IMG/VR virus record: IMGVR_UViG_3300032240_001991 | Location: 248,001 to 312,000 of that record | DNA length: 64,000 nucleotides | Strand: one strand, 5' to 3' | Part shown: one piece after another, positions 5,273 to 57,706 of the stretch | Layout: each line of letters starts with the position of its first letter | Position numbering within the stretch: position 1 is the first letter of the stretch | Notes under the pieces: model-generated | Seen by the model: only the letters and a program-made list of their open reading frames with translations | What the model was told of the DNA's origin: nothing | Database searches by the model: none | Program-made: the position numbers and the translations under genes

Positions 5273-6538
5273 ATGTCTAACGTGATGAAACAGGAAAAGA
5301 TTAAAAAATCAGTGAAAACGAAAGAATTTTCGTCAGCTGAAAAAAACAAGATTATAGAAAAACTTGTTACGGCTCGCGTTGGTCTTCTTCTGCGACATCC
5401 GTTTTTTGGCAATATGGCAACTCGTTTGCAACTTATCGATGCCAGTGATTGGTGCCCTACACTGGCTACCGATGGTCGTAAATTTTATTACAACAACGAG
5501 TTTGTGAGCAAACTTAAACCTAAGGAAGCTGAGTTTGGGTTTGCTCATGAGGTATTACACAACGTATTTGATCATTTGGGTCGCCGCAATGATCGAGATC
5601 CTAATCTATCAAATATTGCCGCAGACTTTACCGTTAATCAAATCCTAAAAGATGAAAAAATTGGCGAAGTTCCGTCAATGATTAAAATCTTTCAGGATAA
5701 TAAGTATCGCGGGTGGAGCTACGAACAGGTATATGAAGACCTTGAGTCTCGTTGTACTAAAATTAATATCAATGATCTTGGAGAACTTCTTGACGAACAT
5801 CTCGACGGTGATGGCGAAGGTGATAGTGAAAACGGAAATGACGGTGAAGAAATTGACGGCAACGGAAAAGGACGTCCGCGGTTAACTGCTGAAGAACGTA
5901 AAAAGATCCGAGACGAAATTAAAGAAGCAATGGTTGCGGCTGCGCAAAATGCAGGAGCTGGTAAACTTCCGGCAGGTATTCGTCGTTTAATTAGCGACTT
6001 TACTGAACCAAAAATGGATTGGCGCCAACTGCTTCGTATGAATATTCAAAGCATTATTAAAAATAACTTTAGTTTTAATCGCCCAAATCGTAAAAGTCAA
6101 CATTCGGGTGCTGTTCTTCCGGGAATGGTTAACGAAGAAACTATTGATATTTCAGTAGCCATTGATATGAGCGGTAGTATTACTAACGCGCAAGCTAAGG
6201 ACATGATTAGCGAAGTTAAAGGTATTATGGATGAATACACTGACTTTAAACTGGACTTGTGGTGCTTTGACACTCAGGTTTATAACTATGCTCAGTTTAC
6301 GGGCGATAATGCTGACGAAATTCTTGATTACGAAGTTCACGGCGGAGGCGGCACTAGCTTTGAAGTCAATTGGGAATTTATGAAGGAAAACGGCATTGAA
6401 CCAAAACGATTTGTAATGTTTACTGACGGATATCCTTGCGGTGGTTGGGGTGACTCAGACTATTGCGAAACACTATTCATTATTCACGGCAACGAAACTA
6501 TCGTTGCGCCATTTGGCCAAACTGCATATTATAAATAA
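5273..6538 (+). CDS. DUF2201-type HExxH metallopeptidase-like domain plus vWA domain protein (partner of the AAA ATPase)
   Basis: TLATDG, AHEVLH, acidic linker, MIDAS DMSGS, GGGGTSF, FTDGY. Confidence 0.88.
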   Translation: MSNVMKQEKIKKSVKTKEFSSAEKNKIIEKLVTARVGLLLRHPFFGNMATRLQLIDASDWCPTLATDGRKFYYNNEFVSKLKPKEAEFGFAHEVLHNVFDHLGRRNDRDPNLSNIAADFTVNQILKDEKIGEVPSMIKIFQDNKYRGWSYEQVYEDLESRCTKININDLGELLDEHLDGDGEGDSENGNDGEEIDGNGKGRPRLTAEERKKIRDEIKEAMVAAAQNAGAGKLPAGIRRLISDFTEPKMDWRQLLRMNIQSIIKNNFSFNRPNRKSQHSGAVLPGMVNEETIDISVAIDMSGSITNAQAKDMISEVKGIMDEYTDFKLDLWCFDTQVYNYAQFTGDNADEILDYEVHGGGGTSFEVNWEFMKENGIEPKRFVMFTDGYPCGGWGDSDYCETLFIIHGNETIVAPFGQTAYYK

Positions 6539-39113: not shown

Positions 39114-39416
39114 TTAGGTTCCTAAGACTGACTTTAACGTAGCCATCTGTGGCAAATAAATTTCTTGCCCTGCATATAGGTCATAGACTGGATCTTTTAT
39201 TACATCTTTATTTCTAACAGCAAATACCCACCAAAGATTTACGTCGCCGTATAAATCATAAGCTAGTAAATCAGGTCTATTAGAATATTGACTAGTAACT
39301 GTAAATTTAACATCGTTAGTGACATTTGGAATATTTCTAAAATTGATAAGGTCTAGATAAGAACCAACAACAGGAGTTGTGTAATACGGACTAGTCTTTG
39401 CATAGTTATTTGCCAT
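39114..39416 (-). CDS. baseplate wedge protein gp53-like (LysM-type)
   Basis: YSNRPDLLAYDLYG...LWWVFA.RN; true start MANNY at 39416 (TAATG overlap with the upstream stop). Confidence 0.85.
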   Translation of the reverse strand: MANNYAKTSPYYTTPVVGSYLDLINFRNIPNVTNDVKFTVTSQYSNRPDLLAYDLYGDVNLWWVFAVRNKDVIKDPVYDLYAGQEIYLPQMATLKSVLGT

Positions 39417-40672
39417 TATAGATATCCTTGCTCTCTTTGTCCACCAATTAACCATCCGGTAGTTGTTGCTTTTAGCATTTCATTTCTGCTGTAAATTGGA
39501 ATTAAATTCAATGTGATTGATGTAACGATTGGAACCGATGTTAATCCATATCCCCAATCTTTTTCTAACGTAAAATAGTCAACTGCGTCTGGGTATTCCA
39601 TTTTAAAACTTTTAACAGCTACGGGTGCTCCGTCAAGTTGATAGTCGCCGTAGGCGAATAATCTGCATACTGGGGGAGGACTTCCTGCGTTTGGATCATC
39701 TCCAAACGGCATTTTTGTTAATGCTCTGCATAAATGTTGTACCGCTAATAGTACCGCAGCATCAAAAGAATTCTGCACGGTAAATTTTCCCGTTAGTGAG
39801 ATTTCTCCTACTGCACTATTTTTATAAAAGTACTGAGTATAATTAGAATGAATTGCATTATTTGCTTGGTAACTTGCAGAATGCTCAATGCTAATAGATG
39901 GAGTGTAAGGAAAAATAATGCCACCGTTTAACGATAATATCCCGCGGGTAGTATTTTTACCTGCAGGAGGTCCGCTAGCAGGCCCAACAAGATATGACGG
40001 AGGTACAATTAATCTCACACGGTTATCGCCGTTTTTAAATTTTGCAAAAGCTGGAGTAACATTTGCAGGATTGGCACTAGGTTTGGCATCAGCTGGAATC
40101 TTTGTTGCTGTTACCTTTACTTCTTCTATTGTACCCCCTCCTACAATATTTTGCGGATTGGACATTTTAGCTGCTGACGCAGCACCGGATGCACTAGGGT
40201 TAGTAGTTGAAGTGCCTGTTGATGCATACGTAGTTGTTTTTTGTGTACCGGATGCACTTGTAGTATTTGTTGTACCGTTGGAACTTACTTGCGTTGAAGA
40301 TCCTGCAGGCGGAGTTGCAGATGCTGCTTGAGTTGCAGCGGCTTTAGCATCGTTTAACGCTGTTTGGGCTGTCCTAACTTTATATTGTGCATCTTGAACT
40401 GCGTTCAGTGCATCTTCCGCAGCTTTAGCTAAAGGAACAAACGCTGCTTCAGCCTGTTTTCTTGCATTTGTTGCTGCGGTAACCTGAGCCTCTGTTCCGG
40501 TTCCATTATTAAATGCTGCAATAGCAGCGTCTTCCGCATCGCTAGCTGCAAGAGCAGCGGCTTTTGCTTTATCTCTCGCTGCGTTGGCTGACGCAGAGGT
40601 GCTCTGTGCAGCAGTTAATGCTGATTGTGCAGCAGTTAATGCTGATTGTGCAGTATCTATAGATGACGCCAT
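39416..40672 (-). CDS. tail tube initiator / baseplate protein (gp48/gp54-like C-domain) with Ala-rich coiled-coil N-terminus
   Basis: GIIFPYTPSI...A.Y....HSNY...Y.NS, GSPPPVCRL.AYG, P..VDY; start moved to ATG 40672 (AAGGA SD, TAAATA at 40692-40697). Confidence 0.65.
   Translation of the reverse strand: MASSIDTAQSALTAAQSALTAAQSTSASANAARDKAKAAALAASDAEDAAIAAFNNGTGTEAQVTAATNARKQAEAAFVPLAKAAEDALNAVQDAQYKVRTAQTALNDAKAAATQAASATPPAGSSTQVSSNGTTNTTSASGTQKTTTYASTGTSTTNPSASGAASAAKMSNPQNIVGGGTIEEVKVTATKIPADAKPSANPANVTPAFAKFKNGDNRVRLIVPPSYLVGPASGPPAGKNTTRGILSLNGGIIFPYTPSISIEHSASYQANNAIHSNYTQYFYKNSAVGEISLTGKFTVQNSFDAAVLLAVQHLCRALTKMPFGDDPNAGSPPPVCRLFAYGDYQLDGAPVAVKSFKMEYPDAVDYFTLEKDWGYGLTSVPIVTSITLNLIPIYSRNEMLKATTTGWLIGGQREQGYL
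40605..40653 (-). repeat. 21-nt tandem repeat (2.3 copies) encoding the heptad AQSALTA
   Basis: tgtgcagcagttaatgctgat twice, then tgtgcag. Confidence 0.85.
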
Positions 40673-40725
40673 ACTAATAATCCTTATGTCATATTTACCT
40701 AATAAATAATCTACGCAGATAATGG

Positions 40726-40754
40726 TTGACACATTGTTGTGTTTTTGCTACACT
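40726..40754 (+). promoter_or_regulatory. sigma70-type promoter of the late sigma gene
   Basis: TTGACA, 17-nt spacer, TACACT with extended -10 TGc. Confidence 0.7.
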
Positions 40755-41740: not shown

Positions 41741-42754
41741 ATGGGATTATTCAAAAAAATTGCAGCATTTACTGATCTTCATGTTGGCCTTAAGAGCAAC
41801 AGTTTAGTTCATTTAAAAGACTGCGAAGAGTTTGTTGATTGGTTTATAGCCAAAGCTAAGGAAGAAAACTGTGATACAGGAATCTTCCTTGGTGATTGGC
41901 ATCATCATCGCAATGCCATTAATCTAATGACCCTTGATACCAGCATTAGGTGTTTGGAGAAATTAGGTCAGGCGTTTGACCAATTCTTTTGGTTTCCAGG
42001 AAACCACGATCTATTCTATAAGGATAAACGTGAAATCCATAGCTCGGCCTTTGGGCGACATATCCCAGGAGTAACAGTTGTTGAATCCCCTACAACCATC
42101 GATAACGTAACACTTGTACCTTGGTTAATTGGTGAAGAATGGAAGACTGTTAGTTCTTTTAAAAGCAAATATGTATTTGGTCATTTTGAACTACCGCTAT
42201 TTTACATGAACGCTATGGTTCAGATGCCTGATCATGGAGAACTGCAAATATCACATTTTAATACCCCCGACTATGTATTCTCTGGTCATTTTCATAAAAG
42301 GCAACACCAAGGAAAGATTTGGTATATTGGTAATGCGTTTCCTCACAACTATGCAGATGCATGGGATGACGACAGAGGAATGATGACCCTTGAATGGGGC
42401 GGCAAACCTGTGTTTCACAACTGGGAAAATTGTCCTAAATTTAGAACAATTAAGCTTAGTAAGCTGATTGATGGTAAAGATGAAATTATGAAATCTAAGA
42501 TGTATCTTAGAGTCAATCTAGACATCGATGTTACCTATGAAGAAGCTAACTTCCTTAAAGAAACATTTTTAAGTGAATACGATATTCGTGAAATTAGCAT
42601 GATACAAGATAAAACAAATATTGACCTTGCTATTGATGCAGCGATTGATACAAAATTTGAAAGTGTTGATCAGATTGTTACTGAAGAATTGTTAAACATT
42701 AAAAGCGAACAGTTTGATCAAAAAATTCTACTAGACATTTATCACAACCTATGA
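41741..42754 (+). CDS. recombination nuclease gp47 (Mre11/SbcD family)
   Basis: FTDLHVG, FLGDWHH, PGNHD, GHFE, FSGHFH. Confidence 0.93.
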   Translation: MGLFKKIAAFTDLHVGLKSNSLVHLKDCEEFVDWFIAKAKEENCDTGIFLGDWHHHRNAINLMTLDTSIRCLEKLGQAFDQFFWFPGNHDLFYKDKREIHSSAFGRHIPGVTVVESPTTIDNVTLVPWLIGEEWKTVSSFKSKYVFGHFELPLFYMNAMVQMPDHGELQISHFNTPDYVFSGHFHKRQHQGKIWYIGNAFPHNYADAWDDDRGMMTLEWGGKPVFHNWENCPKFRTIKLSKLIDGKDEIMKSKMYLRVNLDIDVTYEEANFLKETFLSEYDIREISMIQDKTNIDLAIDAAIDTKFESVDQIVTEELLNIKSEQFDQKILLDIYHNL

Positions 42755-44541
42755 TGTTTAAAATTAAAAATATTACTGTGAAAAATTTTATGAGCGTGGG
42801 CAATCAAACCCAAGCCGTTGATTTTGATCGAGAGCATCTCACGCTAGTACTAGGTGAAAATTTAGACTTAGGGGGCGACGACTCTGGTTCTCGAAACGGA
42901 ACTGGAAAAACTACCATTATCAATTCATTGAGTTATGCTCTATACGGACAGGCACTAACAAATATTAGAAAAGAAAATCTTATCAATAAAATTAATGGTA
43001 AGAACATGTTGGTTACTGTTGAATTTGAAAAGGACGGTATTAAGTATCGTATTGAGAGAGGACGCAAACCTAATGTTCTAAGACTCTTTATTAACGACAA
43101 AGAGCAGGAGTCAGCTGGAATTGATGACGATGCTCAGGGCGATAGTAGAGAGACACAGAAATTTATCGACCAATGTTTAGGTATGAGCCACACTATGTTT
43201 AAACATCTAGTGGCATTAAACACCTATACCGAACCTTTCCTTAGTATGAAAGCTGCCGATCAACGAGAAGTCATTGAACAACTTCTTGGCATTACTATGC
43301 TAAGTGAAAAGGCAGAAGCATTGAAGTTGCAGGCTAAAGAAGTACGTGACACTATTCAGATTGAACAAATTAAAATTGAAACTACTAAAAGTGCCAACGA
43401 AAGCGTACAAAAAAGTATAGACTCGTTAGTAATTAAGAGTAAGGCATGGGATTCAAAGAAAGAAACAGATCTAGAAAATCTAGCTAAAGCTATTGCTACC
43501 CTTGAATCCGTTGATATTGCAGAAGAAATTAATAAGCATGCTGCACTTAAGATTTGGGAAGAAAAGAATTCTCAATTAAATGATCTTAAGAGACAACGTG
43601 CGACTTATCAAACAGCACACGGTCAAGCTGAAAAAAATGTCAAACGGTATCAACGAGATTCTGCGGCATTGGGAGACAAAAAATGTCCTCAGTGCGAACA
43701 AAACTTGCAAGACCATACTCACCAAAATCTGATTGCAGATGCTGCTCGTAATCTCAAAGATTCTAGCGAGTACCTAGATTCTATAAACAAGAATTTAGAA
43801 ACAATTGAAAATAAAATTAAAGACATTAATAACATCGGCCATAGGCCAATTACATTTTATGACTCAGAAGCTGATGCTCTTAATCATAAAAATCAATTAG
43901 ATAATTTAGAAAAAGCATTAGAAGCTAAAGCTAACGAATCTAATCCTTATCAAGAACAAATCGAAGAGCTACAAAAAACAGCTATTCAAGAAATTAATTG
44001 GGATACAATTAACTCATTGACTAAGGTTAAAGACCATCAAGAATTTTTATTGAAACTTCTTACTAATAAAGAAAGTTTTATTCGTAAAAAAATTATTGAT
44101 CAAAATCTTAATTACTTAAACAAACGATTGAGTTACTACATTGATGTGCTAGGATTACCTCACTTAGTTGTTTTTCAAAATGATCTTAATGTAGAGATTA
44201 CAAATTTTGGGCAAGATTTGGATTTTGATAATCTATCTCGAGGAGAAAGAAATCGGCTTATACTAGGGATGAGTTTTGCTTTCCGCGATGTATGGGAAAA
44301 TCTTTACCAAAATATTAATTTACTTTTTATTGACGAATTAATTGACTCTGGAATGGACAGCGCAGGCGTTGAAGCAGGACTAGGTGTTTTGAAAAAAATT
44401 GCCCGTGAAAGAAATAAGAATATATATCTTATATCCCATAAAGAAGAATTAATTGGTAGAGTTAACAAGGTGCTTAGGGTTATTAAAGAATCCGGATTTA
44501 CTTCGTATTCAAATTCTGCCGAGTATATAGAGACGCAATGA
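42751..44541 (+). CDS. recombination ATPase gp46 (Rad50/SbcC family)
   Basis: KNFMSVGN, NGTGKT Walker A, CPQC zinc hook, LSRGE signature, LFIDE, ISHK. Confidence 0.93.
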   Translation: MMFKIKNITVKNFMSVGNQTQAVDFDREHLTLVLGENLDLGGDDSGSRNGTGKTTIINSLSYALYGQALTNIRKENLINKINGKNMLVTVEFEKDGIKYRIERGRKPNVLRLFINDKEQESAGIDDDAQGDSRETQKFIDQCLGMSHTMFKHLVALNTYTEPFLSMKAADQREVIEQLLGITMLSEKAEALKLQAKEVRDTIQIEQIKIETTKSANESVQKSIDSLVIKSKAWDSKKETDLENLAKAIATLESVDIAEEINKHAALKIWEEKNSQLNDLKRQRATYQTAHGQAEKNVKRYQRDSAALGDKKCPQCEQNLQDHTHQNLIADAARNLKDSSEYLDSINKNLETIENKIKDINNIGHRPITFYDSEADALNHKNQLDNLEKALEAKANESNPYQEQIEELQKTAIQEINWDTINSLTKVKDHQEFLLKLLTNKESFIRKKIIDQNLNYLNKRLSYYIDVLGLPHLVVFQNDLNVEITNFGQDLDFDNLSRGERNRLILGMSFAFRDVWENLYQNINLLFIDELIDSGMDSAGVEAGLGVLKKIARERNKNIYLISHKEELIGRVNKVLRVIKESGFTSYSNSAEYIETQ

Positions 44542-44792
44542 TAAACAAGTACAAAGAGCTACATGAACAATTACTAGACTTATTAGTAGAGTATCATAAT
44601 GCTCATGTTAGATTTTTAGATAGACAGAATAGTTATAATTGCAGCCACTTGATTCCTATAACAAAAAAAATAGGAAGACTTGTTAAAGAAATGAGAAAAC
44701 ATAATTTTGAGCTACGGCAAAGTTTATTAGCAGAAAAACGTAGTAGAATATCAAAACAAAAGGAAAAAAAGAAAAATGTCAAACACACTTGA
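44538..44792 (+). CDS. basic helical protein, possible divergent Hc1-like paralog
   Basis: IGRLVKEMRK aligns with VGKLVKARRN of the next gene; Lys-rich tail. Confidence 0.55.
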   Translation: MINKYKELHEQLLDLLVEYHNAHVRFLDRQNSYNCSHLIPITKKIGRLVKEMRKHNFELRQSLLAEKRSRISKQKEKKKNVKHT

Positions 44793-44973
44793 AAATTTAA
44801 AACAGGCACTTGAATCAGCTCTAGCAGAAGATGCTAAGTTTTCTGGCGGCAATAATGCAGCAGGAACACGAGCTCGTAAAGCGTTGGCAGAAGTTGGTAA
44901 ATTAGTTAAGGCACGCCGTAATGAAATTACCGCAGAAAAGAACGCTCGAAAGGATGCTAAGGCAACAAAGTAA
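44776..44973 (+). CDS. histone H1-like protein (Hc1 family)
   Basis: KFSGGNNAAGTRARKAL.E+.KL.K..R.E motif characteristic of Hc1-like proteins. Confidence 0.8.
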   Translation: MSNTLENLKQALESALAEDAKFSGGNNAAGTRARKALAEVGKLVKARRNEITAEKNARKDAKATK

Positions 44974-44974
44974 G

Positions 44975-45400
44975 TTGACCTGGCTGTATCAAGGCAAAGA
45001 AGTTACAGAACTTCCTGAGGATTGTGTTGGATTTATCTATTTGATTACTAATACAATCTCAGGAAGGATGTATGTTGGAAAAAAATTAGCAAAATTCTCA
45101 AAAACAAAATACAAAACAGTAAAACTTAAAAACGGCAACAAGAAAAGAAAGAAAATTAAAAGCAAAATAGAATCAGACTGGCAAACTTATTATGGCTCCT
45201 CAGACGAATTAAACGAAGACATTAAACAACTAGGCAACGAACATTTTAAACGCGAAATACTATACTACTGCACAAGTAAGGCACAAACTTCATATCTTGA
45301 AGCAAAAGAACAATTTGACAGGCGTGTTTTAGAAACAAATCAATACTATAACGGACATATACGTGTTCGTGTCCATGGCTCACACATAATCAAAAAATAA
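44975..45400 (+). CDS. stand-alone GIY-YIG (Seg-like) nuclease domain protein
   Basis: GFIYLITN..SGRMYVGKK, YYGSS, FKREIL, SYLE, YYNG; probable TTG start at 44975 (MTWLYQG) right after the Hc1 stop; no C-terminal NUMOD/HTH domain. Confidence 0.8.
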   Translation: MTWLYQGKEVTELPEDCVGFIYLITNTISGRMYVGKKLAKFSKTKYKTVKLKNGNKKRKKIKSKIESDWQTYYGSSDELNEDIKQLGNEHFKREILYYCTSKAQTSYLEAKEQFDRRVLETNQYYNGHIRVRVHGSHIIKK

Positions 45401-45429
45401 CATCAAGGCACATTAAACAGCACTAAAGG

Positions 45430-45770
45430 TTGACGGGCCAGTTATAATACCGTTGTGGAAAAAGCGGGGAGTAACCGCACACGTAACACGTTGAGCCGCT
45501 TTGCTGCATGCAAAGATAGGATTGGCGTAGGATGAATGCTGTCATTCGTAAAACACTGCTCTAAAACACCTTGGGGATCAGGAACGAGCCCAGGGCATTA
45601 TACATATATAATGTGTCGCAGTAGGTAAGGAAAAGTGCAGAGTCCTTAGAGCTACAGTGTATAAACACCTACTTCCACGTCTTGGCTAGTGAAACTCACA
45701 TGAAAACCGTCCAAGAATAGACAGGAACCAGTAAAAAGGTTCCGTCTGACCAGCTCAATCTACATGAATA
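45430..45770 (+). ncRNA. candidate large structured non-coding RNA (multi-helix, pseudoknotted), family unassigned
   Basis: No ORF of 60 aa or more in the track; about 44% GC by hand count; more than 10 helices, including long-range GUGGAA/UUCCAC, UUGAGC/GCUCAA, ACACU-GCUCUAA/UUAGAGC-AGUGU and AGUAGGU/ACCUACU. Strand inferred from the upstream operon and 3' hairpins. Confidence 0.65.
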
Positions 45771-45784
45771 TCTTAAAAAGAAAA

Positions 45785-45834
45785 CTGCTTCGAGCTGATA
45801 AGCGAAGAAGCAGGTGAGCGTTAGCTCACCTTTC
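45785..45834 (+). terminator. double hairpin closing the ncRNA region (possible intrinsic terminator)
   Basis: CTGCTTC...GAAGCAG stem, then AGGTGAGC-GTTA-GCTCACCT followed by a short TTC. Confidence 0.5.
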
Positions 45835-45836
45835 AG

Positions 45837-45844
45837 TATAAATA
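45837..45844 (+). promoter_or_regulatory. T4-type late promoter TATAAATA
   Basis: Exact T4 late consensus upstream of 45871. Confidence 0.7.
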
Positions 45845-45870
45845 AAACATACTATTAGGATTTTATAGTC

Positions 45871-46731
45871 ATGCGTATTACCCAATTGCTTAATGAAGAA
45901 GAATTAGATGAAATAGGAATGAAAAGTATTGGCTCAGCTGCTGCTAAATTAGGCAGAGGTGCAGCCCTTGGAGTTGGAGCAGTAGCAGGTGGACTAAGAG
46001 GCATGGCTACCGCAGCTAAACAAGGGTATGATGTTGGCAAAGCTGCAACTGGACAAGGACGATTACCAGCAGCAGGAACAACATGGGGATTTGGGAATCA
46101 ATACGTAGGACCAGCAGGCGCACAGGCACCAAGCGGAGGTGGAGCTGCACAGCCAGCAGGTGGCCAAGCACCTAATTTACAAGATCAAATTAAAGATAAA
46201 CAAAAGCAGAGAGACGCAATTGATCAAGAAATTCAACAGTTAAGATCTCAAATGTCTGCTGCTCCGCAAGGACCTTCGGGCACTACAGGTACCACTGGAC
46301 CATCAAGTACTACAAATGCGCCAACCGGACCATCAAGTACTCCTAATGCACCAAATACACCGCCAGCACCTAATGCGCCAAATACACCGCCAGCACCTAA
46401 TGCACCAAATGCTCCAAAACCACCAAAGACTCCAAAACCTAAAGCACCGCCAGCACCTAATGCGCCAAATACACCGCCAGCACCTAATGCACCAAATGCT
46501 CCAAAACCACCAAAGACTCCAAAACCTAAAGCACCGCCAGCACCTAATGCGCCAAATACACCACCGGCACCAAAACCACCAAAGACTCCAAAGACTCCGC
46601 AGCCTAATCTCAATGTACAGCCTGGCGGAAAGAATGCGCCACTGGCACCAAATGCGCCAAAGACTCCGGGAACCTCTACAGCTGAGAGCTTTGATCGTTT
46701 ATTAGATTTGGTTAAGAAATTACAACGTTAA
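45871..46731 (+). CDS. Pro/Ala/Gly-rich low-complexity protein, probable internal virion protein
   Basis: MRITQLLNEEELDE N-terminus, short coiled coil, PNAPNTPPA / PKPPKTPKP repeats; late promoter and AGGA SD. Confidence 0.7.
   Translation: MRITQLLNEEELDEIGMKSIGSAAAKLGRGAALGVGAVAGGLRGMATAAKQGYDVGKAATGQGRLPAAGTTWGFGNQYVGPAGAQAPSGGGAAQPAGGQAPNLQDQIKDKQKQRDAIDQEIQQLRSQMSAAPQGPSGTTGTTGPSSTTNAPTGPSSTPNAPNTPPAPNAPNTPPAPNAPNAPKPPKTPKPKAPPAPNAPNTPPAPNAPNAPKPPKTPKPKAPPAPNAPNTPPAPKPPKTPKTPQPNLNVQPGGKNAPLAPNAPKTPGTSTAESFDRLLDLVKKLQR
46360..46562 (+). repeat. 87-nt perfect tandem repeat (about 2.3 copies) in coding sequence
   Basis: Units start at 46360, 46447 and 46534 and encode a 29-aa Pro-rich unit. 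Confidence 0.9.
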
Positions 46732-56946: not shown

Positions 56947-57019
56947 AGCCTACATAGGGTAGGTTTATGCAGAACCTAACTGCGTATCGACATAGAACGT
57001 CAACATAAGGAGAAAACAA
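56947..57019 (+). promoter_or_regulatory. candidate structured 5' leader RNA
   Basis: Follows TAAATA (56934-56939). Hairpins 56947-56965 and 56966-56986 have complementary loops UAGG/CCUA, then a small GAC/GUC hairpin and SD AAGGAG. Confidence 0.55.
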
Positions 57020-57706
57020 ATGGGACGTCCAATTAAGAAGAAATATTTTGGATTTGGAAATCCAGACGGTGTAGGTGGAGAAGCGTTTGCATCTCTCGTT
57101 GTAACTAACACCGCAACAAACGCAGGATACAGTACAACTACAGCAGTTACATGGGTTGCATCAAGCCCGCAGTTAGTAGGAGGCACTCCTGCTGCTGGTA
57201 CCGCTGCTGTTTCTTTTGTTACTGGTCAAGGCCGTATACAATCCTTAGGCATCACTACTGCGGGTACAGGTTATACCAGCACCGCTAGTGTAACACTAAC
57301 TTTTACACCTGCTCGAGTAGGCGGCACTGCTGCAACATTTGTACTAAACTTATCATCTGCTGTAACAAATACTATAGCTGCAAATGCATGGGTTCCAGTA
57401 TCAGGAACTCAGTCATTAATAGCAGAGATTTTAAAGCAGAAAGCTTCACATCGTTATCGTGTAGCAACTTCAGAAGGTACTGGAGTTTGCCAACTAGTTG
57501 CTAGAGCGCCGGCAGCTGGCGGCGAAATGACGATTATTGCAACTGATAGTGCAAGTAATCAATACTATGTTACTAAATTAACTGCACGCAAGGCTGTAGT
57601 TTATCAGAAGTCAGGTTCAGGATATCAGTTTACAAACGGTACTGAAGTAGGCTGGAACTTAACCGCAGCACAAGCTAACGTCTCAGTTCTAGTAGCATCT
57701 AACTAA
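57020..57706 (+). CDS. virion structural protein
   Basis: MGRPIKKKYFG N-terminus, Thr/Ala-rich, ILKQKA..RY.V motif; late promoter. Confidence 0.7.
   Translation: MGRPIKKKYFGFGNPDGVGGEAFASLVVTNTATNAGYSTTTAVTWVASSPQLVGGTPAAGTAAVSFVTGQGRIQSLGITTAGTGYTSTASVTLTFTPARVGGTAATFVLNLSSAVTNTIAANAWVPVSGTQSLIAEILKQKASHRYRVATSEGTGVCQLVARAPAAGGEMTIIATDSASNQYYVTKLTARKAVVYQKSGSGYQFTNGTEVGWNLTAAQANVSVLVASN

What the first reader, a model, noticed from the sequence alone, without database searches (positions are those of the whole stretch)
44776..45834. Candidate ribonucleoprotein system: minimal GIY-YIG nuclease + adjacent large RNA (+ Hc1)
Seen: a 141-aa GIY-YIG protein with only the catalytic domain plus a Lys-rich insert (KFSKTKYKTVKLKNGNKKRKKIKSK) and none of the C-terminal DNA-recognition modules of Seg/I-TevI homing endonucleases. 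The structured element starts about 30 nt after its stop with no evident terminator in between, at the end of the gp55-gp47-gp46 operon. Established: compact nucleases such as IscB and TnpB are encoded next to their structured RNA partner, although T4 endonuclease II shows a lone GIY-YIG domain can work without RNA. Inference: the RNA may be a scaffold, guide or regulator for this nuclease. Alternatively the nuclease nicks the element as a replication/recombination origin used with gp46/47.
Basis: inference. Interest (0 to 1): 0.75.

Follow-up and report, generated by a model that had tools for sequence, protein, structure and literature searches.

The report
New large phage RNA beside nuclease gene
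Right after a small DNA-cutting enzyme gene, this aquatic T4-like phage encodes a roughly 415-base, intricately folded RNA of a family absent from Rfam 15, and the evidence argues against it being a guide RNA for that enzyme.

Summary
Window 44975-45400 (+) encodes a 141-aa single-domain GIY-YIG nuclease. Conserved RNA structure starts 16 nt after its stop codon and runs to a terminator-like hairpin (about 45416-45834, + strand).

The RNA is real. It has 12 or more helices and at least two covariation-supported pseudoknots. In the 5' domain 17 of 25 pairs show compensatory changes, and G.U outnumbers A.C 326 to 6, which fixes the strand. No Rfam 15 family matches the window's element or ten short loci holding homologous elements. 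No cultured phage holds the RNA, yet two exact patterns each found 120 or more viral contigs.

Linkage is strong. The gene directly upstream is this GIY-YIG in 168 of 185 loci.

The guide/RNP reading is weak for four reasons:
- There is no variable unpaired segment.
- The nuclease family occurs in 459 cultured-phage records; the two inspected have no room for such an RNA.
- In 8 loci an unrelated PD-(D/E)XK nuclease holds the same slot next to the same RNA.
- Near-identical nucleases sit beside different RNA classes.

An unexplained feature is a pair of 10-11-nt direct-repeat motifs whose variable positions are always identical.

Best reading: a new trans-acting structured ncRNA co-transcribed at the end of the gp47/gp46-nuclease operon, with partner and function unknown. 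The replication-origin alternative is not supported.

The parts
41741..44541 (+). gp47-like (41741-42754) and gp46-like (42751-44541) recombination nuclease subunits that head the operon.
   Evidence: Pfam Metallophos 1.3e-07; AAA_23 5.9e-10 and SMC_N. A gp46 homologue is the upstream neighbour of the nuclease in 53 of 82 RNA-bearing loci. The 'gp55' ORF had no Pfam hit.
44538..44792 (+). 84-aa ORF of unknown function
   Evidence: No Pfam or PHROG hit.
44776..44973 (+). Hc1-like small basic protein; a lineage-specific neighbour, not part of the conserved unit
   Evidence: Pfam Hc1 7.4e-13. Found near the GIY-YIG gene in 30 of 80, 2 of 120 and 18 of 119 loci.
44975..45400 (+). 141-aa single-domain GIY-YIG endonuclease (TTG start) with a long basic beta-hairpin
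   Evidence: PF19835 2.4e-33. phrog_447 1.2e-37, which carries the label 'NAD synthetase'. Model pLDDT 93. Fold matches: I-TevI catalytic domain Z 8.8, T4 EndoII Z 5.5, UvrC N-domain Z 5.3. Y22, Y33, R93, E94 and N126 are invariant or nearly so. Single copy in the 326.7-kb record.
45416..45834 (+). The structured ncRNA as a whole, about 415 nt: 5' domain 45416-45552, 3' core 45553-45772, 3' hairpins 45785-45834
   Evidence: Covariation. nhmmer E 5e-29 to 7e-23 against four marine loci. One copy in its genome. No Rfam match.
45417..45547 (+). 5' domain helices: pseudoknot PKa 45417-22 with 45537-42 (the loop of Pd); Pa 45431-36/45450-55; Pb 45454-57/45480-83 with inner hairpin 45464-67/45475-78; Pc 45488-94/45522-28; Pd 45530-34/45543-47
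   Evidence: Pairs with compensatory changes: PKa 4 of 6, Pd 4 of 5, Pc 3 of 7. Model R1 and the count of structure pairs on 65 distinct sequences: 97.1% paired against 81.6% shuffled, 17 of 25 pairs compensatory, 27-51% when partners are slid.
45553..45686 (+). 3' core helices: Pe 45553-58/45655-60 (long-range, crosses Pi and Ph, so a pseudoknot); Pf 45569-75/45589-95 with conserved loop GGAACGA; Pg 45596-602/45607-13 (variable); Ph 45615-18/45683-86; Pi 45621-26/45667-72; Pj 45627-31/45643-47 with an 11-nt conserved loop
   Evidence: Pe 4 of 4, Pj 2 of 4 and Pi 1 of 6 pairs compensatory. For the window row, Pe, Pf and Pg registers were read directly from the sequence. Ph and other pairings among invariant bases are ambiguous: RNAalifold offers an alternative.
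45694..45768 (+). Twin-motif module: motif 1 ACTCACATGAA (45694-45704), hairpin Pk 45724-29/45738-43, TCTGAC 45745-50 (of which TCTG 45745-48 is complementary to CAGA 45638-41 in the Pj loop, giving candidate pseudoknot PKb), motif 2 ATCTACATGAA (45758-45768)
   Evidence: The variable motif positions are identical in both copies in 18 of 18 loci chosen without regard to identity and in 235 of 239 loci overall. MI with the sister position is 0.71-0.75 and no complementary partner column exists. Six motif variants were seen. PKb pairs: C-G 51, U.G 3.
45787..45834 (+). 3' hairpins: a hairpin with tandem G.A/A.G pairs (stem 45787-91/45807-11; GA pairs 45792-93/45804-05; GC pairs 45794-95/45802-03), then a terminator-like hairpin 45813-19/45824-30 followed by TTTC
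   Evidence: G.A and A.G in 52 of 54 sequences. All 7 terminator-stem pairs show compensatory changes.
45836..45843 (+). TATAAATA, the T4 late-promoter consensus, ahead of the next gene (45871-46731)
   Evidence: Read from the sequence. An exact TATAAATA lies 40-260 nt after motif 2 in 18 of 86 and 14 of 97 loci, against 1 of 86 and 0 of 97 control windows. The downstream protein's N-terminus is conserved between the window and the marine loci.

Best explanation
Window 45416-45834 (+) is the gene for a roughly 415-nt, multiply pseudoknotted, trans-acting noncoding RNA. It belongs to a family absent from Rfam 15 and, so far, confined to uncultivated marine and freshwater T4-like phages.

Shown:
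- The RNA structure, its strand and its boundaries.
- It begins 16 nt after the stop codon of the upstream nuclease gene, with no terminator between, and ends in a terminator-like hairpin just before a late-promoter consensus. It is therefore most likely made as the last segment of the gp47-gp46-(small ORFs)-nuclease transcript, or from a promoter inside the nuclease ORF.
- It is single-copy and has no guide-like variable segment.

Inferred:
- The adjacency to the nuclease gene reflects co-transcription and co-expression in the DNA recombination/processing module, not a specific guide-nuclease pairing.
- The upstream protein is a housekeeping DNA endonuclease (GIY-YIG, or a PD-(D/E)XK enzyme in about 4% of loci). 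It may be structure-specific, which was not tested.
- The RNA acts as a folded scaffold, sponge or possibly a catalyst. Its two identical 10-11-nt motifs are twin docking sites for one sequence-specific partner that is not the nuclease.

What it binds and what it does remain unknown.
For: - Structure: the top MI pairs are Watson-Crick stacks. Nine helices are 92-100% paired against 2-92% (mostly under 66%) when partners are slid, with 21 of 48 pairs compensatory and G.U 326 against A.C 6. Tool counts agree: 17 of 25 compensatory pairs, 0 of 500 shuffles as high; the 3' core is 98.6% paired.
- Boundaries and terminator.
- Late promoter enrichment.
Only 4 hits in 185,579 species genomes, all on MAG contigs.
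- No Rfam hit for the window or for ten short loci holding homologous elements.
- No guide-like run.
- The nuclease is replaceable by PF24608 in the same slot. L108 and L141 score 133 bits with the 5'-domain model.
- RNA class is uncoupled from nuclease identity.
- The GIY family occurs in 459 cultured-phage records; the two inspected have no room for such an RNA and blastn with two elements finds none in that collection.
- Twin-motif identity with no internal or nearby complement.
Against: - No transcript evidence: no RNA run was listed.
- The nuclease-RNA junction is much more stable than the neighbouring junctions: about 91% GIY-YIG and 95% any nuclease upstream, against 65% for gp46 upstream of the nuclease. 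This could mean a functional tie beyond co-transcription.
- Replacement of one nuclease by another nuclease, rather than by a random gene, also hints that 'a nuclease' matters.
- The trans-acting role and the protein-docking role of the twin motifs are inference only.
- Several tertiary pairings among invariant bases are ambiguous.
Confidence: 0.45

Rival explanations
1. Nuclease-RNA ribonucleoprotein. The RNA binds the upstream endonuclease, for example through the basic beta-hairpin, and scaffolds, restrains or times its activity. It could act as a decoy that keeps a DNA endonuclease off phage DNA until needed. It would not be a programmable guide.
For: - 168 of 185 RNA-defined loci have the GIY-YIG gene directly upstream and 8 more have a PD-(D/E)XK nuclease.
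- This junction survives where the flanks change: 16 upstream and 24 downstream neighbour clusters.
- The two are co-transcribed with no gap.
- 55 of the 73 nearest GIY-YIG loci, plus L031 after an inserted ORF, carry a homologous downstream element.
- The protein has a long Lys/Arg-rich beta-hairpin.
Against: - The family occurs in 459 cultured-phage records, and neither of the two inspected has room for such an RNA.
- Two unrelated nuclease folds share the same RNA class.
- Proteins 91-93% identical pair with different RNA classes, and the window's nearest relatives in the RNA-linked set carry a different 5' domain altogether.
- The length of the basic hairpin does not track RNA presence: L056 is RNA-linked and has the short form.
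- There is no guide-like segment.
- Nine loci have the RNA with no adjacent nuclease. The two checked have an aldolase and an unknown protein upstream.
Confidence: 0.25
2. Free-standing homing endonucleases parked next to their target. The very conserved RNA gene would be the cleavage site of mobile GIY-YIG or PD-(D/E)XK endonuclease genes, which spread by cutting nuclease-less alleles, as T4 Seg and Mob genes do.
For: - The best Pfam match is the SegE-type GIY-YIG domain.
- Different nuclease families occupy the same slot.
- There is recombination or mosaicism at the nuclease/RNA boundary.
- Conserved RNA genes are classical homing targets (established knowledge; T4 SegB in the tRNA cluster).
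Against: - Occupancy is about 95%, not sporadic.
- The protein lacks any DNA-recognition domain.
- It is single-copy in a 326.7-kb record.
- The family is near-universal in cultured cyanomyoviruses, where the two records inspected have no adjacent RNA.
Confidence: 0.1
3. Cis-acting 3'-UTR element. The fold would control stability or translation of the nuclease/operon mRNA and would have no trans function. The 5' pseudoknot strand lies within a ribosome footprint of the stop codon.
For: The structure starts 8-22 nt after the stop codon in most type-1 loci. There is no separate promoter space. The element always lies on the same strand as the upstream gene.
Against: - About 415 nt with 12 or more helices and long invariant loops is far more than known 3' stabilisers need.
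- The element persists when the upstream gene is a different nuclease, an aldolase or an inserted ORF.
- The twin motifs and invariant loops point to external partners.
Confidence: 0.1
4. Self-processing ribozyme or RNA substrate. The two identical motifs would be cleavage or ligation sites, cut by the RNA itself or by one sequence-specific RNase, releasing the roughly 65-nt hairpin module.
For: Identity, not complementarity, of the two motifs across six variants is what repeated cleavage sites of one enzyme would show, as in type III antitoxin repeats (established knowledge). The highly conserved pseudoknotted core resembles catalytic RNAs in complexity.
Against: No match to any ribozyme family in Rfam. 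No experimental or read-end data.
Confidence: 0.07
5. DNA-level element: a replication or recombination origin nicked by the nuclease and used with gp46/47.
For: Its position next to gp46/47 and a nuclease. The two direct repeats could be read as iterons.
Against: - G.T tolerated 326 times against A.C 6 times on one strand.
- Pseudoknots, tandem G.A pairs and UUCG/GNNA-type loops are RNA hallmarks.
- The GC-skew turning point lies at 38-40 kb, at the gene-orientation switch.
Confidence: 0.03

Closest known systems
HEARO / omega-RNA with IscB, and TnpB omega-RNA (OMEGA systems)
   Same: A large structured, pseudoknotted RNA encoded immediately next to, and co-oriented with, a compact nuclease gene. 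It is abundant in environmental sequence and was noticed first by comparative genomics.
   Different: - No Rfam HEARO match.
- The nuclease is GIY-YIG or PD-(D/E)XK, not RuvC/HNH.
- There is no variable guide at either end.
- No transposon ends were noticed.
- The RNA class is uncoupled from the nuclease sequence.
Large ornate phage-associated ncRNAs of unknown function (GOLLD, ROOL; also OLE, raiA)
   Same: Size over 400 nt, many helices and pseudoknots, invariant loops, phage or aquatic-metagenome distribution, function unknown.
   Different: No sequence or structure match to those Rfam families. A fixed position at the 3' end of a nuclease gene. A twin identical-motif module not described for those RNAs (my knowledge).
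Group I introns with GIY-YIG homing endonucleases (T4 td/I-TevI)
   Same: A GIY-YIG gene next to a pseudoknotted RNA of a few hundred nt in a T4-like phage. The protein's closest solved fold is the I-TevI catalytic domain (Z 8.8).
   Different: - The RNA interrupts no gene: the upstream ORFs are complete and the downstream gene has its own promoter and start.
- The ORF is not inside the RNA.
- No RF00028 hit even at E up to 10.
- The helix order differs from P3-P9.
- The protein lacks the I-TevI linker and DNA-binding domains.
T4 endonuclease II (DenA) and other lone GIY-YIG domains
   Same: About 140 aa, catalytic domain only, with an extra hairpin. Encoded by a T4-like phage and working, in T4, without RNA. 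Fold match Z 5.5.
   Different: No detectable sequence similarity. The closest Pfam model is SegE-type. A different genomic position, next to gp46/47.
Type III toxin-antitoxin RNAs (ToxI/ToxN)
   Same: A structured RNA with repeated identical motifs encoded next to a nuclease gene in a phage-related context.
   Different: The RNA lies downstream, not upstream. There are only two short repeats inside a large unique fold. The nuclease folds are DNases rather than ToxN-type RNases.

Membership tests
Any Rfam 15 family (4227 models) | Covariance-model match at the gathering score, or a consistent weak match across homologues | tested here: not met
   The window at gathering threshold yields only freshwater-2, which lies elsewhere. 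For 45300-45950 at E up to 10 there are only four chance-level hits of 16-18 bits. Ten short loci holding homologous elements at E up to 5 gave two unrelated hits.
Group I intron | Interrupts a host gene, with exons flanking the ribozyme | tested here: not met
   The upstream ORFs end in stop codons. The downstream ORF has its own ATG and TATAAATA.
Group I intron | Match to the RF00028 core (P3-P8, P4-P6) | tested here: not met
   No hit at E up to 10 in the window or at E up to 5 in ten short loci holding homologous elements. The order of helices differs.
OMEGA-type guide RNA (IscB/TnpB omega-RNA) | A variable, unpaired guide segment of about 16 nt or more at one end of a conserved scaffold | tested here: not met
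   The only high-entropy runs are 6 columns long and sit in hairpin tips. All length variation lies in helical inserts.
OMEGA-type guide RNA (IscB/TnpB omega-RNA) | A RuvC (with or without HNH) nuclease partner | tested here: not met
   The partner gene is GIY-YIG (PF19835) or PDDEXK_15 (PF24608).
OMEGA-type guide RNA (IscB/TnpB omega-RNA) | RNA encoded adjacent to, or overlapping, the nuclease gene on the same strand | tested here: met
   The structure starts 16 nt after the stop codon, and 8-22 nt after it in most type-1 loci.
GIY-YIG nuclease superfamily (the protein) | GIY...YIG motifs, conserved Arg/Glu/Asn, and the alpha/beta GIY-YIG fold | tested here: met
   PF19835 2.4e-33. Y22, Y33, R93 and N126 are invariant and E94 nearly so. 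The top fold matches are I-TevI, PD-T4-3, T4 EndoII and UvrC.
Seg-type free-standing homing endonuclease | A C-terminal DNA-binding region after the GIY-YIG domain | tested here: not met
   The 141-aa protein is filled by the 123-position catalytic profile. The model shows no further domain.
Seg-type free-standing homing endonuclease | Sporadic, often multi-copy distribution among related phages | tested here: not met
   Single copy in the record. Present in 459 cultured-phage records and in about 91% of RNA-bearing loci.
RNA-guided or RNA-dependent nuclease (functional claim) | Physical protein-RNA complex and RNA-dependent activity | not testable with these tools
   Complex prediction did not fold a protein-RNA job. 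No RNA-seq run was listed.
Type III toxin-antitoxin | Tandem antitoxin RNA repeats upstream of an endoribonuclease toxin, with a terminator between them | tested here: not met
   The RNA is downstream. There are two short repeats only, and no terminator between gene and RNA.
Hc1 histone-like protein (44776-44973) | Pfam PF07432 match above the cut-off | tested here: met
   48.6 bits against a cut-off of 23.5, E 7.4e-13.

The most novel reading that the evidence does not exclude
The RNA is an obligate partner of the minimal DNA endonuclease encoded upstream (GIY-YIG, or PD-(D/E)XK where that replaces it). This would be an RNA-nuclease system in T4-like phages in which a large folded RNA controls where or when a domain-less nuclease cuts, for instance by discriminating host from phage DNA or by gating junction resolution. 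It would be the first RNA-dependent GIY-YIG enzyme, with the twin motifs as its operating sites.
Probability: 0.15. Interest if true: 0.9.

Novelty: new variant of a known kind. Interest (0 to 1): 0.68.

Why it matters
Large, intricately folded bacterial and phage RNAs are rare. Each class characterised so far has opened new biology: RNase P, group I/II introns, and HEARO, which turned out to be the IscB guide RNA. GOLLD and ROOL form RNA-only assemblies.

This family is about 415 nt long and has covariation-supported pseudoknots. It is absent from Rfam 15 and from the cultured-phage collection searched, yet it occurs in hundreds of marine and freshwater T4-like phage contigs at a fixed place in the recombination-nuclease operon.

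Even if it is not a guide RNA, it is a well-defined target for structure determination and for asking what a lytic phage needs such an RNA for. The twin motifs that co-vary for identity give a concrete handle for finding its partner.

The work also corrects an annotation. The widespread phage protein family labelled 'NAD synthetase' (phrog_447) is a single-domain GIY-YIG nuclease.

Tried and rejected
- Known RNA families. Rfam was searched at the gathering threshold over the window and at E up to 10 or 5 over the element and ten short loci holding homologous elements. Nothing matched. ARAGORN found no tRNA or tmRNA.
- Cultured phages. blastn with the window element and with a marine homologue found no match.
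- Transcription. One 'any' and one 'rna' run search gave only DNA runs of the source study.
- Protein-RNA complex prediction. The job was counted but not folded, so it is no evidence either way.
- Group I intron reading. Rejected on gene context, the Rfam result and helix order.
- Origin reading. Rejected on GC skew and on strand-asymmetric G.U pairing.
- Internal or nearby complement of the twin motifs. None within the RNA, within the loci or by mutual information. Pairing of the two motifs with each other fits the CATG variant but not the GATGA variant (my reading).
- A possible resemblance of motif and flanks to 16S rRNA, C/D boxes, anticodon loops or RNase P P4 was considered from memory only. 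None is supported by any tool result.
- First attempts. RNAalifold on the mixed 42-sequence alignment gave few pairs because two 5'-domain types were mixed. A loose compensatory-pair scan was uninformative. Two regex versions for the motifs failed before the correct one.
- Literature. Four full-text searches and two papers read found no description of this RNA.
- Not resolved. The secondary structure of the G-variant class, and the exact tertiary pairings among invariant bases of the 3' core.
Full report
**What is at the coordinates**

The window is bases 248001-312000 of a 326.7-kb IMG/VR virus record. On the + strand lies a run of genes:
- gp47 (41741-42754; Metallophos);
- gp46 (42751-44541; AAA_23/SMC_N);
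- an 84-aa ORF;
- a 65-aa Hc1-like ORF (44776-44973; Pfam E 7.4e-13);
- a GIY-YIG ORF ending at 45400.

Homologues start M-(T/D)-W-x-Y, so the TTG at 44975 is the start and the protein has 141 aa. The Pfam SegE_GIY-YIG profile is matched end to end (123 of 123 positions, E 2.4e-33), which leaves no room for a DNA-binding module.

The stretch 45401-45870 has no ORF of 60 aa or more and is GC-richer than its flanks. It has no terminator-like site before its 3' end. It ends in a GC-rich hairpin (45813-45830), followed by TTTC and a TATAAATA box (45836-45843) ahead of the next gene. One correction: the conserved structure begins about 16 nt after the stop codon, not about 30.

**The RNA is real**

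The window element finds full-length relatives directly after the GIY-YIG stop codon in marine contigs whose nuclease is only 58-61% identical (nhmmer E 5e-29 to 7e-23).

An exact pattern taken from the 3' module found 120 or more viral contigs, and a second pattern for a sister variant found another 120 or more. The same pattern hits only four contigs among 185,579 species genomes, all in MAGs and probably mis-binned phage. It hits nothing in 50,697 cultured-phage records.

In 54 non-redundant sequences of the window's class, the highest mutual-information column pairs are almost all Watson-Crick pairs arranged in antiparallel stacks. For nine helices:
- pairing is 92-100%, against 2-92% (mostly under 66%) when the partner is slid;
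- 21 of 48 pairs show compensatory double changes;
- there are 326 G.U cells against 6 A.C cells, which fixes the + strand as the folded strand.

A covariance model of the 5' domain recovered one hit per locus in 67 of 100 sources. The tool's own count on 65 distinct sequences gives 97.1% paired cells against 81.6% in shuffles (0 of 500 as high). It also gives 17 of 25 pairs and 250 cells with changes on both sides, against at most 35 cells when slid.

The 3' core model hits 100 of 100 sources. It is so conserved that only 5 of 24 pairs vary on both sides.

**Anatomy in window coordinates**

5' domain:
- The 5' strand 45417-22 pairs with the loop of hairpin Pd (45537-42). This is pseudoknot PKa, with 4 of 6 pairs compensatory.
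- Hairpin Pa is 45431-36/45450-55.
- Pb is 45454-57/45480-83 and has a variable tip.
- Pc is 45488-94/45522-28. It encloses a variable insert of 0-80 nt in relatives.

3' core:
- Pe (45553-58/45655-60) is long-range and crosses Pi and Ph, making a second pseudoknot.
- Pf is 45569-75/45589-95, with an invariant GGAACGA loop.
- Pg is variable.
- Ph is 45615-18/45683-86.
- Pi is 45621-26/45667-72.
- Pj is 45627-31/45643-47, with an 11-nt nearly invariant loop. The CAGA in that loop is complementary to TCTG at 45745-48 (C-G 51, U.G 3).
- Pk is 45724-29/45738-43.

3' end:
- A hairpin with tandem G.A/A.G pairs spans 45787-45811.
- The terminator hairpin follows; its seven pairs all co-vary.

Some pairings among invariant bases, such as Ph and PKb, have alternatives and are not settled.

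**An unexplained feature: twin motifs**

Motif 1 (ACTCACATGAA, 45694-704) and motif 2 (ATCTACATGAA, 45758-768) flank hairpin Pk. Across the family six variants of the core occur: CATGAA, CATGAT, GATAAT, GATGAA, GATGAG and GTATGA. The variable positions are the same in both copies:
- in 18 of 18 loci selected without regard to identity;
- in 235 of 239 loci overall;
- again in the extra variant of L047.

Each variable position has its highest mutual information with its sister position (0.71-0.75). No column behaves as a complementary partner. No complement lies within the RNA or the surrounding 5-15 kb.

Two sites kept identical rather than complementary suggest one external sequence-specific partner or enzyme acting at both.

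**Linkage to the nuclease**

Starting from the RNA alone, the ORF directly upstream on the same strand is the GIY-YIG in 83 of 88 C-variant loci and 85 of 97 G-variant loci.

In 3 + 5 further loci the slot is filled by a different nuclease. For the first three Pfam gives PDDEXK_15 (PF24608, E 1e-24 to 1e-27; phrog_244). These loci have gp46 still upstream, and two of them (L108, L141) score about 133 bits with the 5'-domain model as the same RNA class. The five G-variant cases were identified by tblastn only.

In nine loci no nuclease is adjacent. The two checked have an aldolase and an unknown protein upstream.

Starting from the protein, 55 of the 73 nearest relatives have a homologous downstream noncoding element. 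One more has it after an inserted 342-aa ORF.

Flanks are mostly syntenic: gp46 lies upstream in 53 of 82 loci, and a conserved late protein lies downstream in 40 of 72. They nevertheless fall into 16 and 24 clusters. The nuclease-RNA junction is thus the most stable one.

Hc1 accompanies the pair only in a sublineage.

**Why it is probably not a guide or specific RNP partner**

1. There is no unpaired hypervariable stretch. The only high-entropy runs are 6 columns long and sit in hairpin tips, and all insertions are helical.
2. The GIY-YIG family (phrog_447, labelled 'NAD synthetase') is found in 459 cultured-phage records. These include most cyanomyoviruses, the OM43 phage Melnitz (55% identity), and Sinorhizobium and Stenotrophomonas phages. 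The gap after the gene is 148 nt in Melnitz and absent in P-HM1, the two records inspected, and blastn with two elements finds no match in that collection.
3. Two unrelated nuclease folds sit beside the same RNA.
4. RNA class and nuclease sequence are uncoupled. Proteins 91-93% identical flank different classes. The window's 11 nearest GIY-YIG relatives in the RNA-linked set (73-85%) all carry the G variant, and the type-1 5' domain gave no credible hit in any of those loci (one 23.6-bit hit at E 0.001 in L249).
5. Its length does not track RNA presence.

The protein itself is a bona fide GIY-YIG enzyme. Its catalytic Tyr, Arg, Glu and Asn are conserved. Fold matches are I-TevI Z 8.8, a 5hmC-specific GIY-YIG restriction enzyme Z 7.4, T4 EndoII Z 5.5 and UvrC Z 5.3. 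It is single-copy in the record, which shows no T4 EndoVII homologue, although that search's control was silent.

Its exchange with a PD-(D/E)XK nuclease that PHROGs labels RusA-like, next to gp46/47, suggests a housekeeping DNA endonuclease, possibly structure-specific. This is inference.

**Most likely mechanism**

The RNA is transcribed as the terminal part of the gp47/gp46-nuclease operon, or from a promoter inside the nuclease ORF. It folds into a compact pseudoknotted body and acts in trans, with the twin motifs as docking or processing sites for an unidentified partner.

The structure, strand, boundaries, linkage and absence of a guide are shown. Co-transcription, the trans action and the role of the motifs are inferred.

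Rivals kept open, with my rough probabilities:
- a non-programmable nuclease-RNA complex, acting as regulator or decoy (0.25);
- homing endonucleases parked beside a conserved target (0.10);
- a cis-acting 3' UTR (0.10);
- a self-processing RNA (0.07);
- a DNA origin (0.03).

The origin idea is contradicted by the skew minimum at 38-40 kb and by RNA-type pairing.

**Comparison with what is known**

It works most like the orphan large structured RNAs (GOLLD, ROOL, and HEARO before IscB was understood). It resembles omega-RNA systems only in lying beside a compact nuclease gene.

It fails the tested membership features of Rfam families, of group I introns (no host gene interrupted, no core match) and of OMEGA guides (no guide, wrong nuclease). 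Four full-text searches found no description of it.

I rate it a new RNA family of a known general kind. It is of clear interest to RNA and phage biologists, and the more radical RNP reading is unlikely but not excluded.

**Limits**

- No transcript evidence could be obtained.
- Protein-RNA binding could not be modelled.
- All relatives are metagenomic fragments, so absence of a nuclease elsewhere in a genome cannot be shown.
- The G-variant class was not folded in detail.

Noticed in passing
window 56948-57022 (+): A freshwater-2 RNA motif (Rfam RF02980, 58.7 bits against a gathering score of 49.9). It ends in AAGGAGAAAACAAATG and so runs into the start codon of the 228-aa ORF 57020-57706. 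It looks like a cis-regulatory leader of that gene.
   Followed up: partly
L108:8216-8725 (+), L141:1520-2071 (-), L191:5250-5762 (+): In loci with the same RNA and gp46 upstream, the GIY-YIG gene is replaced by a 170-184-aa PDDEXK_15 (PF24608) nuclease that PHROGs labels RusA-like resolvase. This looks like non-orthologous displacement of one nuclease by another in the same slot.
   Followed up: partly
window 44975-45400, and phrog_447 / RefSeq records such as NC_015280.1 PHM1_182: This GIY-YIG family is annotated 'NAD synthetase' in PHROGs and in many RefSeq phage records. Pfam, the conserved catalytic residues and the predicted fold all say GIY-YIG nuclease, so the label looks like a propagated error.
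   Followed up: yes
window 45871-46731 (+), repeats 46342-46592: The gene after the RNA encodes a 286-aa protein. It has a conserved N-terminus (shared with the marine loci) and a Pro/Ala/Asn/Lys-rich tandem-repeat region (87-nt unit, 2.7 copies, 95% matches; also 27- and 9-nt periods). It sits behind a TATAAATA late-promoter box. No Pfam or PHROG hit.
   Followed up: partly
L047:4736-4890 (+): A further twin-motif variant (CTCGTATGAA / TCTGTATGAA). The loop of the Pj-like hairpin (GGTACGAG) is complementary to motif 1 in this sequence only. This may be chance, or a clue to an alternative tertiary contact.
   Followed up: no
L031:4390-5418 (+): A 342-aa ORF is inserted between the GIY-YIG gene and the RNA, which then lies at 5458-6006. 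It shows the pair can be split by an insertion without loss of the RNA.
   Followed up: no
L010, L026, L019, L015, L032, L007, L013, L042, L036 (downstream of the GIY-YIG gene, opposite strand): In GIY-YIG loci that lack the RNA, the Hc1-like gene lies downstream on the opposite strand rather than upstream on the same strand.
   Followed up: no
window 39416-40732 (-) and 40768 (+): A divergent gene pair marks the switch of gene orientation and the cumulative GC-skew minimum (38-40 kb). The minus-strand ORF encodes a 438-aa protein with a long Ala/Ser/Thr-rich low-complexity N-terminal half.
   Followed up: no
whole record G000 (326,658 bases): CheckV completeness is given as only 36% for a 326.7-kb T4-like record. 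Several relatives are of similar size (317-347 kb viral contigs and a 335-kb MAG contig carrying the same RNA). These may be jumbo T4-like phages for which the estimate is unreliable.
   Followed up: no
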